Assembly (NCBI RefSeq): GCF_001447785.1
Contig: NW_015175421.1
Location: 1-64,000, forward strand
DNA from: Gekko japonicus
Lineage: Eukaryota
Length of the DNA stretch: 64,000 nucleotides
Reading direction: 5' to 3'
Below are positions 30,064 to 56,974 of this stretch, piece after piece. A program made the translations under genes and the position numbers. Positions within the stretch are counted from its first letter, which is position 1; each line of letters starts with the position of its first letter. The notes under the pieces were generated by a model. That model ran no database searches. It worked only from the letters and a program-made list of their open reading frames with translations, and was not told the DNA's origin.

Positions 30064-33000
30064 TTTCAAAGACTCCTGGTCCCTAGGATGCTAACAAAGA
30101 AGGGAAAGTGTCTTTAAAGCTTCCAGTTTAACAGGTGCATGTGCTTGCATTTTTATAGCACACAGGGTGCTGAACTCATTTGTTACAAGGGACAAAACAA
30201 GGAAGTCTCTAGGCACTGTCACACAATCTGTTGATATTACATCCAGAATTATTATGAAGTAAAGCATTTTTTAATCTCCCTAAACAACTTTTTTAGTAAA
30301 ATGGACTTGTGTTTACTTGTATTAGTTACACTAAATCTGACTTTGGAAATAAACAAGAATAGCTGCTAAAGAAATGAGAAAAAGTATAAATTAATTCAGT
30401 ACCAACGTTCACTTTTGAACCACATTGACTTCAATCAGATGCATGTTTGTATATAATCTTAGATACATGACTGACACATTCAACCCTATAGTACTGTAGA
30501 TTAATACTCCTCTCTGGCAGGTCTTCTTAAAAGTTGGCTAACACAAATGCAGTGGAAACTCAAAACAGGAATAGTAAAGACATCCTCCCCACTCTTTTTA
30601 ACCATCCTTTTTTCAAACAAGAGTTTTCACATCCCCCCCAAAAAAAACCCAGAGTAGTGCAGTTCTCCTGCGTGCAGTCTTCATTTCCTCCTCTTCTTGC
30701 CTTCAGAGGGTTCCCCAGCAGCTTCACTTCCACTAAATGAAAGTGTGATTTGTCCTACTGAGGGGGTCACTGCTTGGCTTCAAGCTACCCATTTATGCTA
30801 TTCATTTTAATACAGGGTGAAGGTGGACCCTTGTCAGGCTTTGGTAGCATTTCCAAGCATGGATTTACAGGACACGCACACAGCAGCCAAAATAAAGCAA
30901 TGAATCCCAAACACAAAAGATTGTACACAAGCCCACATGACCTCTCTGAAACAAATACATGCCTTCCCTTCCAGCTTGGGCTCTGGCAGGTGCATTAATA
31001 AAGATCTGAAGAGATAAAGGGTTGGAGATGGAGTGTTCGTTTGGACAGCACAGGCACCAGCAGGCTCAGCACCTCCAGCCACATGCAGCCAGCAGCAAGG
31101 ACCAAAAAGTGGCACTTTTGAGAACCCATATGGAAGAAGAACCACTAGGTGGGTGGGCAGCCACTGTGACTGATTCTGCAAGAGACGGGGCACACCTGAG
31201 TCTTCCTCTGAACAGGCTCCTGTGAAGCTGATTAATAAAACAAGAAAGAGGCAGCTCGAGATTAAAAGGCACATGCATGACTGGGCGGGAAAGAGACTTC
31301 TCTACCTCTCACCACGTGACTCCACACCTGTTCACTCCCCCCCAGAAGCTTTCGTTGCCCTGTGCCAAGCTAAAAATCTCTGCTAAAATTTGTGCACCAG
31401 CATACGCTAGAGCAGTTTCACAGGAACACTGGTTTTGACCCAAACCGCTCCACCCTAACCATACAGCACTATCTCAATAAATACCAGAGAGCACTGCAGT
31501 TAGAGTGAGTCTTCAGGGAATTTCTGGACATTTTTGAGGGGGGTGGGGGGGAGTTTCATGTCCGATCTTCCTACTGATGGAGAAACCTCTGCCCTGCAAG
31601 AAACACTTGCCCTAGGTTTTCTACCCAGAAAAAAAGATTGCTCAGCTTGGATTTGTCCTTGCTTAAGGGGAGAGGCCCCTCAGTTCTTTTGGTGGAGCAG
31701 GACAGTGATGCTGTTTCCTCGGAACCCAGACCTCGACATTAGCATGCACCGTTATCAAATACACGGGAGCATGTGCCTCTGTTGAGGTGATGGGGTAGGG
31801 AAGGCTCAGAGAAGGAATGAGAAGCCTGTCGCCAACAAACATGGAAGCCTAGCCAGTCCTTCAGCTGTTCAAAAAACAAAAACAAAAAAACCCTCCTCTT
31901 TATTCATGTCCCATCCTTTTACATTGCATTTTGCCAAGAGTCCTGACAAGAAAGTAACAGCCATTCTATTTTAGAAAAAATTAAAAGCTATATTCTGATG
32001 TTACTAACGTATACCATGCTCATTACTAATAGAAGAAGAGGAGATTGGATTTATACCCCGCCCTTCACTATCCAAAGGAGTCTCAGAGCGGCTTAAAAAC
32101 TCCTTTCCTTCCCCCTCCCCACAACAGACACCCTGTGAGGTAGGTGGGGCTGAGAGAGCTCTGACAGAAACTGCTCTATTTCAAGAACTGCTCTGACAGA
32201 ACTATGGCTTGCCCAAGGTAATCCAGCAGGTGCAAGTGGAGGAGCGAGGAATCAAACCTGGGTCTCCCAGGTTAGAGTCCACACACTTAACCACTACACC
32301 AAATATTTTATAGCTCTCTCCTGTTTGTTTATGTGATCTGAGAAAGAGTACTGAGATGTTTTATTGTGATTTTCAGCTGTCCCAAAAGTATTACCCTACA
32401 ATTGATGCAGCAATAGACCAACAAGCAACTTAATTCTGTTTGCCTTTTCAAATCGTGACTGGTGTTTTTTTGTTTCAGAAGAACAATTAGTTCTTACTCT
32501 TTTGGCAAAACAACGTAATAATAACTGTGCTCAGGGGAGTTAGGCCAATGTTAATTGTGTGTTGAACATGGCTTGAGGATGATCCTATCTGTGAAGAAAC
32601 TAAACTCCTGGAAAAAGATGAATTTCCATGGATCATGTAACAGCCTAATAAGTTTGTTTTTAAGTAAAATCTCTGAAGCCACTAGAATATATTAAGATAA
32701 TTGGCACCTGTGGAACCCACCTCCTTAGGATGATTCTCCGGCTGTCATGAAAATATCAATACCTGGAATATTTTGTAGTGGTTAAGTGCGCGGACTCTAA
32801 TCTGGGAGAACCGGGTTTGATTCCCCACTCCGCCACTTGCACCTGCTGATGTGACCTTGGGTCAGTCACAAGCTCTGGCACAGCTGTCCTTGAAAAAGAG
32901 CAGTTTGTGTCAGAGCTCTCTCAGCCCCACCCACCTCACAGGGTGTCTGTTGTGGGGAGGGGAAGGGAGAGGAGTTTGTAAGCCGCTCTGAGACTCCGAG

Positions 33001-39890: not shown

Positions 39891-41328
39891 CTGTGGTGAC
39901 TTACATCGCTATATAAATCATAGAACAAAGTTGTATCTGAAGAAGTGTGCATACACACAAAAGCTTATTCCCAGAGTTGAACTTTGTTGGTCTTAAAGGT
40001 GTCGTTGGACTCAAACTTTGTTCTTCTGCTTCAGACCAACACGGCTACCCACCTGAATCTATATAAAATCATAGTCATTGTGTGTAAATTTGTATCTATG
40101 AATGGAAACTGGTGTATGGAAATGTTGCCCTCTTCTTAGATCATCCACAAATGGTCACTCTCTTCCCTGTCATAATCCTACTCCCTATTTGTCTGGCTTG
40201 AGGGAAGATGCATTTCTGTAAGGTACCCAAGGAAACCGGGTTTGATTCCTCACTCCTCCACATGAAGCCAGCTGGGTGACCTTGGGTCAGTCACAGCTCT
40301 TTTAGAGCTCTCTCAGCCCAAAAAATAAGTCTAGCTTGCCACCTAGCATGACACTAATTAGCTAGAACATAAGGCTGCCAGACAGTCTTCGGATCTCCTG
40401 GCTGTACTCCACACAATGCCATACGATAATTATTATTTATCTGTACTCAGCCTCAGCCTGGGCTTCAGGCAACAGGAGAAATGCTGCAGTCCAAGCTTGC
40501 TTAGATGCAAGACTTCCACCTTCAAAGCTCTCCTGTTTCTTATCTAGAATGAGTGGGAAGCAGTATGTGGTTTCTCAGAAGCAAGGCAAAAACATTTGCC
40601 ACGTGCTCAGAGGCACTATCATGATTTCTCAGGTGCTGAAAAACAAGATAAACACACATGGAGTTATCTTTCAAGGAAGGGTGTAGTGACAGCAATGAAT
40701 TTTGCATTGTTGTAGAGAAGAGGAGGAGGAGGAGGAGATTGGATTTATACCCTGCCCTTCACTACCTGAAGGAGTCTCAGAGCAGCTTACAATCCCTTTC
40801 CCTTCCCCTCCCCACAACAGACACCCTGCGAGGTAGGTGGGACTGAGAGAGCTCTCTCTCGAGAACTGCCCTTGAGAGAACAGCTCTGAGAGAACTTACA
40901 ACTGACCCAAGGTCACACCAGCAGCTGCATGTGGAGAACTGGAGAATCAAACCTGGTTCTCCCAGATTAGAGTCCACGCTCCTAATCACTATACCAAACT
41001 GGCTCTGTTTAGGGGTTACTAACCGCCTGGAAGGAAAAAAAGTCCTTTCCCTTTAATAGAGTCTTAATGGGATACTATTTACTTGTGGAAAATGCCATCA
41101 AGTTACAGCCAATTTAGGGCAAAGCCATTGCCTGCCTCTGGGTAGTGACCCTGGACTTCCTTGGTGGTCTCCCATTCAGGCACTAACCAGGGCCGACCGT
41201 GCTTAGCTTCTGAGATCTGACGAGATCAGGTGAGCCTGGGCCATCCAGGTCAAGGCAGGATGCTAATTATCTCTTGATGTTGTTCACTTCCACACCACAG
41301 AAAGTGTCAGTTACTCATTTTGACGCAT

Positions 41329-52810: not shown

Positions 52811-54742
52811 ACTATGACTACTCTAGTCTAGAAAACATGAAGGGAAAATGGGATTCACTTGGCTCTATAAGGTGGGAAGTCTCATTACATCAGCAGATGT
52901 GTGTTACCCAACTCTGATCGCTGGGAACAGGAATGCAGAGAAGGGTGGTAGAATCTTCTACTGGGCAGAACCATGGGGTCTCTCCTGCAATCGCAAAAGA
53001 CCAGCTTGGGGGGAGAATTGGCAAGAAGAAGATTGACAACCCTGATATTTTTGAACTGTGTGACCAAATCTAGCAACTGCAGGCTGGGGGTGGGGTGGGG
53101 TTATGTATTAATATATATTTTTATGCATTCATAAAAGCAAGATTGCACAGTTCACTCGAAACCTTGTTTGTTTGTTTTTAAAATGAAATCTGAGAATTCA
53201 AGTACCTGCTTTCCTTAATTGTGTGCTCTGGACACAAAGAATAGGAAGAAATTTCTGGAGCTCTGATATATATATTTTAAGACTTCCCTGTTGTACATTC
53301 TCCCCCTCACACACACACACACACAGACACACAACCTATGCTGTTTCTGCTTCGGGTCTGAGGAGATAAGGCGGGGTAGAAATATTCTGAATGAATTAAT
53401 ATGTGCTAAGGATTCTCAGATTATTTTGGAACTGTTGTGTTTGTTTGCATTATTTATTTAGACATTTTTGCCCCAGTTTCCCCCCGATGGAGAACCAAAG
53501 CGGCTTACAACATCATTCTCCTATCTCCCACCGCTCCTACAGGAGGTGGGGGTGGGTGGGCTGGCAACCCTTTATCCTCCATTTTGTCGACATGATGATG
53601 GCAACAAGATCCCCGTGAGGTTGGTTAGGTTGAGAGAGAGACAGTAGATGGCTCAAAGTCACCCAATGAGTTAGGGTTACCAACTCCTGGTTAGGAAATA
53701 TCTGGAGCTTTGGGGGTGGGGCCTAGGGAGAGTAGGGTTTGGGGAGGGGACGGACCTCAGCGGGGTATAATGCCATAGAGTTCACCCTCCAAAGCAGCCT
53801 CTCTTTATTTGCAGGGGAACTGATCTCTGTCGTCTGGAGATCAGTTGTAATTCAGGGAGCTCTCCAGGCCCCACCTGGAGGCTGGCAAGCCTAGTTAGGC
53901 AGATTGGGGATTTGAACCTGGGTCTCTCAGATCCTAGTGTGTCATACTAACCATTGTACCATCTCAGGGACACGGTCAAAGTCTCATAGGCAATTGAAAC
54001 CCGTGTCTGCTCATTTGCCAGAGTCCCGTCTTGTTTCATCTGGAGAAGTAGAACCCACCAATTCCACGTCAGTCACTGAATTTGAGCTGGTCGGTTTCCC
54101 GGTGTAACAGGCCGGATTAACCCCCCGGCCAGAGTAACCCCGGGGTTATTCTGGCCTAGCCTAGAATAACCCCGGAGGGGTTATTGAGGGGTTATTCTGG
54201 CCTAGCCTAGAGTAACCCCGGGTTAATCTGGCCGGCTGTAACAGGCCAGATTCACCCCCCCCCGGCCAGAGTAACCCCGGGCCTAGCCCAGAGTAACCCC
54301 TGCCAGGCCGGGCCAGAGTAACCCCGGGGGTTAGTCCAGACGGGGGGTTACTCTGGGCTAGCCTATACTAACCCCCACCTGGCCAGAGTGGTAAGTTAAA
54401 TGTCAGCTGAATCCAATCTCTTCTTCTTTTTAACTTATTTTTTTTTTAACTTCTTTTTAACTGCACAACACAACAACCTGTAACCCCGGGCTTAGTTGAG
54501 TGGTAACTTAGATGTCAGTGTAACCAGCACAGTGTCAGCTTCTGAGGGTTTCAGGTCCATGAGAAACTTGTCAGGCAATCTGAGATTCCTCTTGGTAGTG
54601 AAGAACAGGGTATGAATCCAATCTCATTAGTCAACAGACCCAAATATCAACAGTACTACGACTGACATTTCTTTGGAGAGCCAAATTTTTTAAACTTAAA
54701 CTATATAGGTAGGTACTTTGTTATTAACTTAATAATGGGACT

Positions 54743-54958
54743 CCTAGCAGTTCGAAAGCAAGAAATTACAAGTAGATAAATAGGGACCACTTTGGTGGGA
54801 AGGTAACAGCGTTCCGTGCGCCTTGGTGTTTAGTCATGCCGGCCACATGACCACGGAAACGTCTTCCGACAGCGCTCTTTGGCTTTGAAACGGAGATGAG
54901 CACCGCAACCCTAGAGTCGGATTCGACTGGCTTTCGAGCAAGGGAAACTTTTACCTTT
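54743..54958 (+). mobile_element. Sauria SINE (5'-truncated) nested in the Ginger-like element
   Basis: Reverse complement of the 39548 copy; ends in TTTTACCTTT. Confidence 0.85.
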
Positions 54959-55355
54959 AAGGCGGCCTTTGCTGAAAACGTCCTCGATCTGATTGAGGTA
55001 CGTTCACTGAAGTCGACCCCTTCCAACTCTCCCTTCCCTCTTTTTTTTTAAAAAAGGTTGCCCACAGCTTTAGATTAGAAAGAAAGAAAGAAAGACGGGA
55101 AGAGCATAGAGGGAGGGAGGGCAGTGAGACAGAAAGAGGGAAGAAAAAAGCAAAGCGGGAAAGCTGATTGACTTCAGTCTTAGAACTCTGCACACATAGA
55201 ATTTTATTACTTCAACCAGGAAAAAAACCAACAGTAAAAACATTAGACTTGATGTTCACTTAACTTAGCTGTCCATAATGTAATATAAGTCATAACATCC
55301 TGAAACTTCTACTTTGATGGCTACCAAGTACCCACAGAGATATAATTATTCAAAG

Positions 55356-56090
55356 CTAAACACTAATGACAACATCAAAATGATCATGCTTGTTTCCAAG
55401 ATAAAGTGCATGCTCTGTTGTTGACTGCAGATTGAAGCTTGCGGGATAGGTCAACCATTCCATGGAGTGACCAGCTTTTGTGTGGATGAGGATGTCGCAA
55501 CTCAGCAGATTCGCTGTGGCCATGATCTCTGCATCAGTTGCCCAGACTCCATCATGAGAGATGCCAGAAGTGCTCACATATTCACTCACATTCCGGTTCA
55601 AGTAGTCCTGTAGTTTCTCTGTCAAGTCAGTGTTCATGTGGTGGATGACTTTATTTCTAAGAAGGGAGTGGTTGTCCTCTGATCCTGTCAGGATGTAGCT
55701 GATGGCCCGGAAGTAGCAGTTCCCATCACCTTTGGTTTTATACATACGCCGTGGATGCCCAAGCTCCCTTGTGCGTCCACAGTACACAACCTTTACAAAT
55801 GAAAGGCCAAGAGTGGTGCTAAGATACTTTCTTACAGAACTTGGTAGTGGGTTGAAAGTCTTCATCTGCTGGCATCTCTGTGAGATGTTGATGTCATCAT
55901 TGTCTGGTCCCTCACATGGTCTTTTGAGTGTCTTCTGCTTCAGGCTGTCATTTGCAGAGTCACTAGGATAATCATCATGGGACTTGGCTGCCTTCCTTGG
56001 CCTGAGTCCTGTGAGTCTCTGGGTCAGGTTATAAGTGGGGTGCCCTCGGTATTGGGGCTTCCCAAGAGTAAAAGGCAGCGCCTCTGGCAA
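55356..56090 (-). CDS. OTU-family cysteine protease/deubiquitinase domain (transposon-encoded; C-terminal part of a Ginger1 transposase)
   Basis: Uninterrupted 244-codon frame with KGDGNCYFRAIS (catalytic Cys), VWATDAEIMATANLL and HDHFDVV (catalytic His). First in-frame ATG at 55865 would give 169 aa. Expression unknown. Confidence 0.8.
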   Translation of the reverse strand: MPEALPFTLGKPQYRGHPTYNLTQRLTGLRPRKAAKSHDDYPSDSANDSLKQKTLKRPCEGPDNDDINISQRCQQMKTFNPLPSSVRKYLSTTLGLSFVKVVYCGRTRELGHPRRMYKTKGDGNCYFRAISYILTGSEDNHSLLRNKVIHHMNTDLTEKLQDYLNRNVSEYVSTSGISHDGVWATDAEIMATANLLSCDILIHTKAGHSMEWLTYPASFNLQSTTEHALYLGNKHDHFDVVISV

Positions 56091-56788
56091 CAGAAGGTGG
56101 TTCTCTCTGGTTATTGGGGAAGTATCTCTCTCAGTAGGAAAAGACAGCAGCCCCAGAAAGCAGGCCTGGGGGGTTAATCTGGCCTGGGGGGTTATTCTAG
56201 CCTAGGCCAGAGTAACCCCGGGGTTTCTCTGGCCGGGGAGTGAATGGGAGGGTTACTCTGGCCGGGGGGTTAATCTGGCCTGTTACACCGGACCTGCAGA
56301 ATTTTCACAGGCCCATCTTTGTCATCTTGCTGGTGATTTACCTGCTTATCCTCAGCGGAAACAGCATCATCTTCACCCTCATCTATGCCCACCCCCACCT
56401 TCATATCCCCATGTACTATTTTGTCGCCATATTGGCTGTCCTGGAGGTCTTCTACACCACTGTCACCATGCCCAAGATGCTGGCCGACCTTCAGAAAAGC
56501 ACTCCATCCATCTCTCTCCATGGCTGCCTGCTGCAAATCTATTTCTTCCACTCGCTGGGGATCACAGAGGCTTGTTTGCTCACAGTCATGGCTTATGACC
56601 GGTACTTAGCCATCTGCACCCTGTTAAAATATTCCACCACGATGACCACCAAGCTTTGTTTCCAGCTAGTGCTGGGATGCTGCGCGTGTGGCTTCACTTG
56701 TCCTTTGCCGGAAGTCATCCTGACTTCCCAGCTGCCGTTCTGCGGCCCCAGTCGCATCAAGCACATGTTCTGTGATTTCCCTCCACTG

Positions 56789-56974
56789 AGGTACCACTTC
56801 AGTGGGAAGGTAACAACGTTCTGTGTGCCTTGGTGTTTAGTCATGCCGGCCACATGACCATGGAAACGTCTTCGGACAGCGCTGGCTCTTCGGCTTCGAA
56901 ACAGAGATGAGCACCGCAACCCTTGAGTCGGATTCGACTGGCTTTCCAGAAAGGGAACCTGTACCTTTACCTTT
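56789..56974 (+). mobile_element. Sauria SINE (5'-truncated) at the OR pseudogene breakpoint
   Basis: Matches the Sauria SINE 3' half; ends ACCTTTACCTTT. Confidence 0.85.

What the first reader, a model, noticed from the sequence alone, without database searches (positions are those of the whole stretch)
54103..56287. Ginger1-type DNA transposon in a reptile, inserted into an olfactory receptor gene
Seen: a 2185-bp insert with TGTAACA/TGTTACA ends, a 38-bp TIR (1 mismatch, extending imperfectly to about 70 bp) and an exact CCGG duplication. Deleting the insert plus one CCGG restores the OR reading ...VGF-PDLQNFH, so the boundaries are precise. It contains an OTU ORF. Established: Ginger1 elements (Gypsy-integrase-like cut-and-paste transposons) have TIRs, CCGG/CCGT-specific 4-bp TSDs and C-terminal OTU or Ulp1 protease domains. 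They were described mainly from invertebrates, while vertebrates are known mostly for the domesticated GIN1/GIN2 genes. Inference: this is an internally deleted, integrase-less member of a Ginger1 family that was mobile in a squamate. The retained CpG-rich ends and intact ORF suggest it is young, so horizontal transfer is possible.
Basis: partly seen in the sequence, partly recalled or inferred. Interest (0 to 1): 0.92.

Follow-up and report, generated by a model that had tools for sequence, protein, structure and literature searches.

The report
Young Ginger1 transposon in a gecko
A 2.2-kb cut-and-paste DNA transposon of the Ginger1 type, which has lost its integrase but kept its OTU protease part, sits inside an olfactory receptor gene of a gecko; it belongs to a family of a few hundred near-identical copies, which shows that Ginger1 was mobile recently in an amniote.

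Summary
The insert is at 54103-56287. It has TGTAACAGG ends, a 38-nt inverted repeat with 1 mismatch, and CCGG on both sides. Removing the insert plus one CCGG restores the receptor frame.

A related species carries the same locus without the insert (a contig joins 54100 to 56291), so the boundaries and the 4-bp duplication are real.

The minus-strand OTU reading frame matches the C-terminal third of full-length 640-aa Ginger1 transposases (zinc finger, DDE core, GPY/F module, OTU) at 62-63% identity. It matches shorter relatives that still carry the GPY/F module at 77%. No integrase is present here, only a displaced 43-nt fragment. The copy is therefore non-autonomous.

The host is Gekko japonicus or a very close relative: the receptor piece is 99% identical to an NCBI protein of that species. 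Raw reads from three runs give about 1x depth on the flanks and about 200-260x across the whole element, OTU part included. This deleted form has itself multiplied to a few hundred copies.

A nested SINE is secondary. Horizontal transfer is neither shown nor excluded: the closest named relative is in a frog at 73%.

The scan noted another such copy in this genome (unchecked). Verdict: a new, young member of a known kind.

The parts
54099..54102 (.). Left copy of the CCGG target site duplication
   Evidence: The related species' contig has a single site here (table 8).
54103..54140 (+). Left terminal inverted repeat, beginning TGTAACAGG (the TGTNR type)
   Evidence: 37 of 38 positions complementary to 56250-56287.
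54103..54375 (.). Left subterminal region. It holds 11 copies, in both orientations, of the 15-nt motif GGCCAGAGTAACCCC, and a second degenerate copy of the terminus at 54237-54258. These are probably transposase binding sites.
   Evidence: 17 motif matches in 64 kb, all inside the two ends, 0.17 expected; 54103-54219 resembles 54237-54375 at about 70%.
54528..54570 (-). 43-nt remnant of integrase coding sequence (the region just after the DDE core). It lies on the far side of the OTU, so the interior is a rearranged patchwork.
   Evidence: 84-85% nt identity to L001:370-412 and L003:468-508, both inside integrase reading frames.
54745..54957 (+). Nested SINE fragment, 5'-truncated. It is secondary and not part of the transposon.
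   Evidence: six further copies in the window at 86-94%; depth about 55,000x; 65-120 reads per run skip 54744->54958, so most family copies lack it.
55356..56090 (-). Open frame of 244 codons encoding the OTU cysteine protease part of a Ginger1 transposase. The GDGNC cysteine motif is at 55716-55730 and HFDVV at 55368-55382. The first ATG is at codon 76. Homology to relatives runs from about 55985 (weakly from 56063) to the stop.
56165..56287 (.). Right subterminal region with 6 copies of the 15-nt motif
56250..56287 (-). Right terminal inverted repeat
56288..56291 (.). Right copy of the CCGG target site duplication
54040..54102 (+). Olfactory receptor coding sequence upstream of the insertion (...NSTSVTEFELVGFP)
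   Evidence: P0215 aligns across the site.
56288..56788 (+). Olfactory receptor coding sequence downstream of the insertion, cut again by a second SINE copy from about 56789

Best explanation
This is a non-autonomous Ginger1 DNA transposon in a gecko (Gekko japonicus or a very close relative).

Shown: it has TGTAACAGG termini, a 38-nt TIR, arrays of a 15-nt subterminal motif, and a CCGG target duplication. It was inserted precisely into the first part of an olfactory receptor coding exon after the split from a related species. It retains only the OTU protease third of the ancestral integrase-OTU transposase gene, plus a displaced 43-nt integrase scrap. This deleted form is present in a few hundred very similar copies.

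Inferred: the copies were moved in trans by a Gypsy-integrase-like DDE transposase from an autonomous Ginger1 elsewhere in the genome. That enzyme would bind the subterminal motifs, cut at the TGT...ACA ends and integrate with a 4-bp stagger at CCGG. The deleted interior arose by abortive gap repair. The OTU frame is open because the copies are young, not necessarily because it is used. The insertion, together with a SINE further downstream, inactivated the receptor gene.
For: Structure and precise boundaries.

Empty orthologous site: a related species' contig joins 54100 to 56291, with flanks about 7% diverged (37 differences in 544 nt) (table 8). An uninterrupted 331-aa orthologue-like receptor, P0215, reads through the site.

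OTU: Pfam 5.7e-12.

Relatives:
- P0001 is 77% identical and has the GPY/F (SH3_Tf2-1) module upstream.
- P0338 and P0339, 640 aa, carry an H2C2 zinc finger, DDE core, GPY motif and OTU, and are 62-63% identical over 201-206 aa.
- P0038, P0183 and P0192 have the same architecture.

Copy number: flanks are at about 0.8-1x and the element at about 175-265x in three raw-read runs, uniform across the OTU part and the deletion junction (table 2).

Youth: there is 1 TIR mismatch. Only 8 positions are listed where nearly all family reads differ from this copy. No indel at 10% or more of reads falls inside the ORF (tables 3 and 4).

Target site: L002, a related element, also has CCGG directly before TGTAACAGGCC.

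Family definition: Bao et al. 2010, PMC2836005.
Against: No integrase is present in this copy or anywhere in the window, so the transposase that moved it was not seen. Target duplications were read for one complete copy and one end of a relative only; an unchecked scan note adds one more. The list of variant positions from the reads was truncated, so the 0.4% private divergence is a minimum. The single-copy depth is low (about 1x), so the copy number is good only to a factor of about two.
Confidence: 0.9

Rival explanations
1. Origin by horizontal transfer. The family entered the gekkotan lineage recently from another animal, rather than persisting vertically in tetrapods.
For: Ginger1 is known in amniotes only as old relics (PMC9004415), whereas this family is young and multi-copy. 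Close relatives (70-77% aa, about 80% nt, dS 0.33-0.6, dN/dS 0.19-0.55) occur in unlabelled run assemblies and JGI metagenome contigs. In the OTU tree, the well supported clade holding the gecko copy also holds a frog copy and has no resolved internal order. More distant relatives are in molluscs and a sponge.
Against: The hosts of the closest relatives are unknown, so no incongruence with host phylogeny was shown. The nearest named relative is a tetrapod (the frog Anomaloglossus, 73% over 154 aa), which also fits long vertical persistence. A related species also has the family (short contigs 3-8% diverged). No relative was found in viral contigs.
Confidence: 0.3
2. The OTU-only form is not a mere deletion product. 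It is kept because its protease acts in trans, for example as a deubiquitinase that protects the transposase, so copies that keep the OTU frame spread better.
For: The amplified unit keeps an open 244-codon frame with the GDGNC and HF motifs intact. A second element, L002 in another host, is also integrase-deleted and keeps the OTU, with a breakpoint within a few tens of bases of this one. dN/dS between them is 0.28.
Against: There is no ATG before codon 76 and no promoter or RNA evidence. An open frame is expected by youth alone. The low dN/dS may have accrued in autonomous ancestors. L001 has a broken frame.
Confidence: 0.12
3. The element belongs to another TIR superfamily, or is a Helitron or LTR derivative that merely captured an OTU gene fragment.
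For: OTU domains also occur in animal Helitrons (PMC2836005). TG..CA ends and 4-bp duplications also occur in LTR elements.
Against: The ends are inverted, not direct, and there is no reverse transcriptase. Helitrons make no target duplication and have no TIR. The OTU groups with integrase-OTU fusion proteins, and an integrase scrap is still inside. The CCGG target together with TGTNR ends is the published Ginger1 signature. Ginger2 prefers AT-rich targets, and GingerRoot makes 6-bp duplications with TA ends.
Confidence: 0.03

Closest known systems
Ginger1 elements with OTU-type transposases (Ginger1-1/2/3/11_HM of Hydra, Ginger1-1_AC of Aplysia; Bao, Kapitonov and Jurka 2010, PMC2836005)
   Same: TGTNR termini, TIRs of tens of bp, a 4-bp CCGG target duplication, and an OTU domain that in full-length relatives follows the H2C2-DDE-GPY/F integrase.
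   Different: The host is an amniote. This copy has no integrase, only an OTU part and a 43-nt scrap. The deleted form itself has reached a few hundred copies. The left end carries a duplicated terminus.
Ginger1 protein fossils in alligator, turtle, coelacanth and frog (Frith 2022, PMC9004415)
   Same: Ginger1-derived sequence in sarcopterygian genomes.
   Different: Those are ancient degraded relics found by sensitive protein matching. This family has intact ends, an intact duplication, an open frame, an empty site in a related species and about 200-fold depth.
GIN1 / GIN2 domesticated genes of vertebrates
   Same: Descent from a Ginger1 transposase.
   Different: Those are single-copy host genes that keep the integrase part and have no TIRs. 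Here the integrase is lost and the sequence is a mobile multi-copy element.
Ginger2/TDD and GingerRoot
   Same: Cut-and-paste transposons with integrase-related transposases. Ginger2 also has TGTNR ends.
   Different: Ginger2 targets AT-rich RTATAY and lacks GPY/F and YPYY. GingerRoot makes 6-bp duplications with TA...TA ends.

Membership tests
Ginger1 | Termini follow TGTNR ... YNACA | tested here: met
   TGTAA at 54103 and TTACA at 56283-56287.
Ginger1 | Terminal inverted repeats of about 40-270 bp | tested here: met
   38 nt with 1 mismatch, continuing imperfectly (63-nt arms at 89%). This is at the short end of the published range.
Ginger1 | 4-bp target site duplication, CCGG or CCGT/ACGG | tested here: met
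   CCGG on both sides, and a single site in the related species' empty locus. The one visible flank of L002 is also CCGG.
Ginger1 | Target specificity holds across the copies of the family | not testable with these tools
   Only one copy lies in the window. An unchecked scan note reports a second copy with CCGG.
Ginger1 | The element encodes a Gypsy-like integrase (YPYY, H2C2, DDE, GPY/F) | tested here: not met
   tblastn with nine transposases that carry an integrase core finds only the OTU part. A 43-nt integrase scrap remains. The copy is therefore filed as a non-autonomous derivative.
Ginger1 | The retained coding part is homologous to transposases that have that integrase | tested here: met
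   P0338 and P0339 (640 aa: H2C2, DDE core, EPRWIGPY, OTU) are 62-63% identical over 201-206 aa. P0038, P0183 and P0192 have the same domains.
Ginger1 | C-terminal OTU or Ulp1 protease domain | tested here: met
   Pfam OTU 5.7e-12, score above the curated cut-off.
Ginger2/TDD | AT-rich RTATAY target; transposase without GPY/F | tested here: not met
   The target is CCGG, and relatives carry GPY.
Helitron carrying OTU | No TIR, no target duplication, Rep/helicase protein | tested here: not met
   A TIR and a duplication are present, and the relatives are integrase fusions.
Gypsy LTR retrotransposon | Direct long terminal repeats, reverse transcriptase | tested here: not met
   The ends are inverted. 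No other coding similarity was found in the element.

The most novel reading that the evidence does not exclude
Ginger1 is or was very recently active in an amniote. It arrived in geckos by horizontal transfer, and the form that spread is an OTU-only derivative whose deubiquitinase-like protein contributes in trans to its own mobilisation. That would be the first hint of what the OTU or Ulp1 modules of transposases are for.
Probability: 0.1. Interest if true: 0.75.

Novelty: new member of a known kind. Interest (0 to 1): 0.45.

Why it matters
In the literature I could search, Ginger1 in amniotes appears only as domesticated genes (GIN1) and ancient protein fossils. A family with intact ends, a precise empty site in a related species and a few hundred near-identical copies shows that this integrase-type cut-and-paste transposon was mobile in a lizard lineage in the recent past. 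It offers a vertebrate source for a Ginger1 transposase and its recognition sequences, a test case for horizontal transfer, and a natural experiment on why such transposases carry an OTU protease. It is also a plain example of a receptor gene inactivated by transposon insertion. It is not a new kind of element, and it may already be listed in Repbase or Dfam, which I could not search.

Tried and rejected
The genomic context of the protein hits, and therefore the autonomous partner and further target duplications, could not be fetched.
- The listing of cluster members gave no accession or organism for the closest relatives.
- The protein-atlas search gave only loose OTU look-alikes and nothing on taxonomy.
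- A viral-contig scan found no relative.
- Three papers fetched for 'Ginger' in squamates matched only the author name Gingeras. Two large repeat surveys do not mention Ginger. 'Ginger' plus 'Gekko' returned only herbal medicine papers.
- The reading that the nested SINE is an original part of the element is rejected, because many family reads skip it.
- The idea that the window copy and L002 share one deletion breakpoint could not be settled. The alignment there is too noisy, and the breakpoints seem about 30 nt apart.
- The host of L001-L003 could not be identified. I recall those sample numbers only vaguely, so I make no claim about them.
The 273 N in the window were left alone.

Full report
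**What is there**

The window reads ...GGTTTCCCGG then TGTAACAGGCCGG... at 54099-54115, and ...GGCCTGTTACA then CCGGACCTGCAG... at 56277-56299. The repeat finder gives arms 54099-54140 and 56250-56291, 42 nt and 98% complementary. That is the CCGG plus a 38-nt terminal inverted repeat with one mismatch, followed by a 63-nt imperfect arm pair at 89%.

A 22-nt terminal pattern with up to three mismatches occurs only at the two ends and once more inside the left end, at 54237. None is expected from 100 shuffles.

A 15-nt motif, GGCCAGAGTAACCCC, occurs 17 times in 64 kb with up to two mismatches. All 17 lie inside the two ends, in both orientations, against 0.17 expected. These are the kind of subterminal repeats that transposases bind.

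**The boundaries are exact**

Upstream, the frame reads ...NSTSVTEFELVGFP. Downstream of the insert it reads PDLQNFHRPIF..., with strong Pfam olfactory receptor hits.

When reads and contigs were laid on 53800-56600, a 1304-bp contig from a run of a second, related organism aligned to 53867-54100 and to 56291-56600 at adjacent contig positions. It showed 37 differences in 544 nt (table 8). That is the orthologous empty site with a single CCGG.

A 331-aa receptor from a public run assembly is 91% identical and reads ...TEFVLVGFLDLQNVH... straight through the site. The insertion therefore happened after the two species split, and it made a 4-bp CCGG duplication.

**Host**

The downstream receptor piece is 99% identical to the NCBI protein 'olfactory receptor 6K2-like [Gekko japonicus]', a partial 175-aa model that starts just after the insertion. 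The next best named hits are other squamates at 79% or less. The 'reptile/squamate' part of the finding is right: the host is a gecko.

**The coding part**

The minus-strand frame at 55356-56090 is open for 244 codons and hits Pfam OTU at 5.7e-12. The GDGNC cysteine motif and the C-terminal HFDVV are intact. There is no ATG before codon 76, so calling it an 'intact ORF' overstates it. It is an open fragment of a longer gene.

Its relatives show which gene that was:
- P0001 is 77% identical and carries the EPRWVGPY module of Gypsy-type integrases directly upstream of the OTU.
- P0338 and P0339 are 640-aa proteins with an H2C2 zinc finger, a DDE core, EPRWIGPY and then the OTU. The window matches their residues 436-635 at 62-63%.
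- P0038, P0183 and P0192 have the same domain order by Pfam.

This is the transposase architecture that defines Ginger1 (Bao et al. 2010, PMC2836005).

Homology in the window begins at about 55985, with a faint trace to 56063, roughly 220-300 nt inside the right end. tblastn with fifteen relatives, nine of which carry an integrase core, finds nothing else in the 64 kb. blastn does find a 43-nt piece of integrase coding sequence at 54528-54570(-), 84-85% identical to L001 and L003. It lies on the far side of the OTU. The interior is therefore a rearranged remnant, as expected from abortive gap repair.

**The family**

In three raw-read runs labelled as the same species, the unique flanks are covered about 0.8-1x. 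The element is covered about 175-265x at 90% likeness or better. The depth is even across the OTU part and across the deletion junction (table 2). The deleted, OTU-bearing form is thus itself a family of a few hundred copies; the estimate is good to about a factor of two.

Only eight positions were listed where nearly all reads differ from this copy. No indel shared by 10% or more of reads lies inside the frame (tables 3 and 4). The variant list was truncated, so this is a lower bound on divergence.

The related organism also has short contigs of the OTU part, 3-8% diverged (table 8).

This is therefore not the scan's first sighting.

**Secondary events**

54745-54957 is a 5'-truncated SINE with six more copies in the window and about 55,000-fold depth. 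In each run, 65-120 reads join 54744 to 58958-side directly (the 54744->54958 joint), and a further 23-48 reads show a 54746->54964 variant. Most family copies therefore lack the SINE (table 5). Another copy of the same SINE cuts the receptor again from about 56789.

**Relatives elsewhere and horizontal transfer**

A scan of JGI metagenome contigs gave L001-L003 at about 80% nt and 70-74% aa identity. L002 is also integrase-deleted, keeps the OTU, and starts CCGG|TGTAACAGGCC next to an exon of a kinase-like host gene.

dS to these loci is 0.33-0.6 and dN/dS is 0.19-0.55.

In a tree of the OTU part, the gecko copy falls in a supported clade (96/97). The clade also holds unlabelled sequences, the 640-aa transposases, and a frog sequence 73% identical over 154 aa that is fused into a 'CD226' gene model of Anomaloglossus. 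Named relatives further out are in Haliotis, Nucella and the sponge Oopsacas.

Horizontal transfer is possible but not shown. No viral contig carries a relative.

**What is known**

Bao et al. described Ginger1 from Hydra, Aplysia, lancelet and aphid. Frith (2022, PMC9004415) states that Ginger1 had not been found in sarcopterygians, and reports relics in alligator, turtle, coelacanth and frog.

I found no paper on Ginger1 in squamates. Repbase and Dfam could not be searched, so this is absence from the papers held, not proof of novelty.

**Verdict**

This is a non-autonomous Ginger1 element, young, from a family of a few hundred copies in a gecko, inserted in an olfactory receptor gene that is now a pseudogene. 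It is a new member of a known kind. Its interest lies in recent Ginger1 activity in an amniote, and in the open questions of where the autonomous copy is, how the family arrived, and whether the retained OTU matters.

Noticed in passing
window 54745-54957 and about 56789-56969: Two copies of the same SINE, seven in the window in all at 86-94%, with about 55,000-fold read depth. One is nested in the transposon and one cuts the same receptor gene further downstream. The nested one is 5'-truncated, has no A-rich tail and shows only a 2-nt overlap at its junction.
   Followed up: partly
window 54237-54375: The left end carries a second, about 70% similar copy of the terminal unit, starting with TGTAACAGGCC and preceded by CCGGC. 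Contigs of the related species and a few reads skip about 160 nt here (54126/54128 -> 54288), so some copies have a single unit. Thirteen of the element's 17 CCGG sites lie in its own ends, so self-insertion is conceivable.
   Followed up: partly
window 54528-54570 (-): A scrap of integrase coding sequence lies downstream of the OTU rather than upstream. The order of the ancestral gene is therefore scrambled in this family.
   Followed up: partly
window 54365-54549: In each run, 10-34 reads 'go back 185' (54549 -> 54365). This implies a subfamily with a tandem duplication of this segment.
   Followed up: no
L002:417-1426: A metagenome contig from an unknown animal holds an independently integrase-deleted, OTU-keeping Ginger1 element. 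It has the same terminus and a CCGG flank, and is inserted beside a kinase-like exon. L003 looks like its longer, integrase-bearing version.
   Followed up: partly
protein P0343 (NCBI, Anomaloglossus baeobatrachus, 'CD226 antigen'): A frog gene model ends in a Ginger1-type OTU that is 73% identical to the gecko one. It is probably a transposon fragment merged into the gene model.
   Followed up: no
window 53800-53893: Another high-copy repeat, with about 6,400-fold read depth, lies just upstream of the receptor gene.
   Followed up: no
window 54579-54625: A 47-nt piece inside the element matches two other places in the window (40735-40781 and 32041-32087) at 83-85%. It is very deep in the related species' contigs. 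It is an unidentified repeat fragment in the interior.
   Followed up: no
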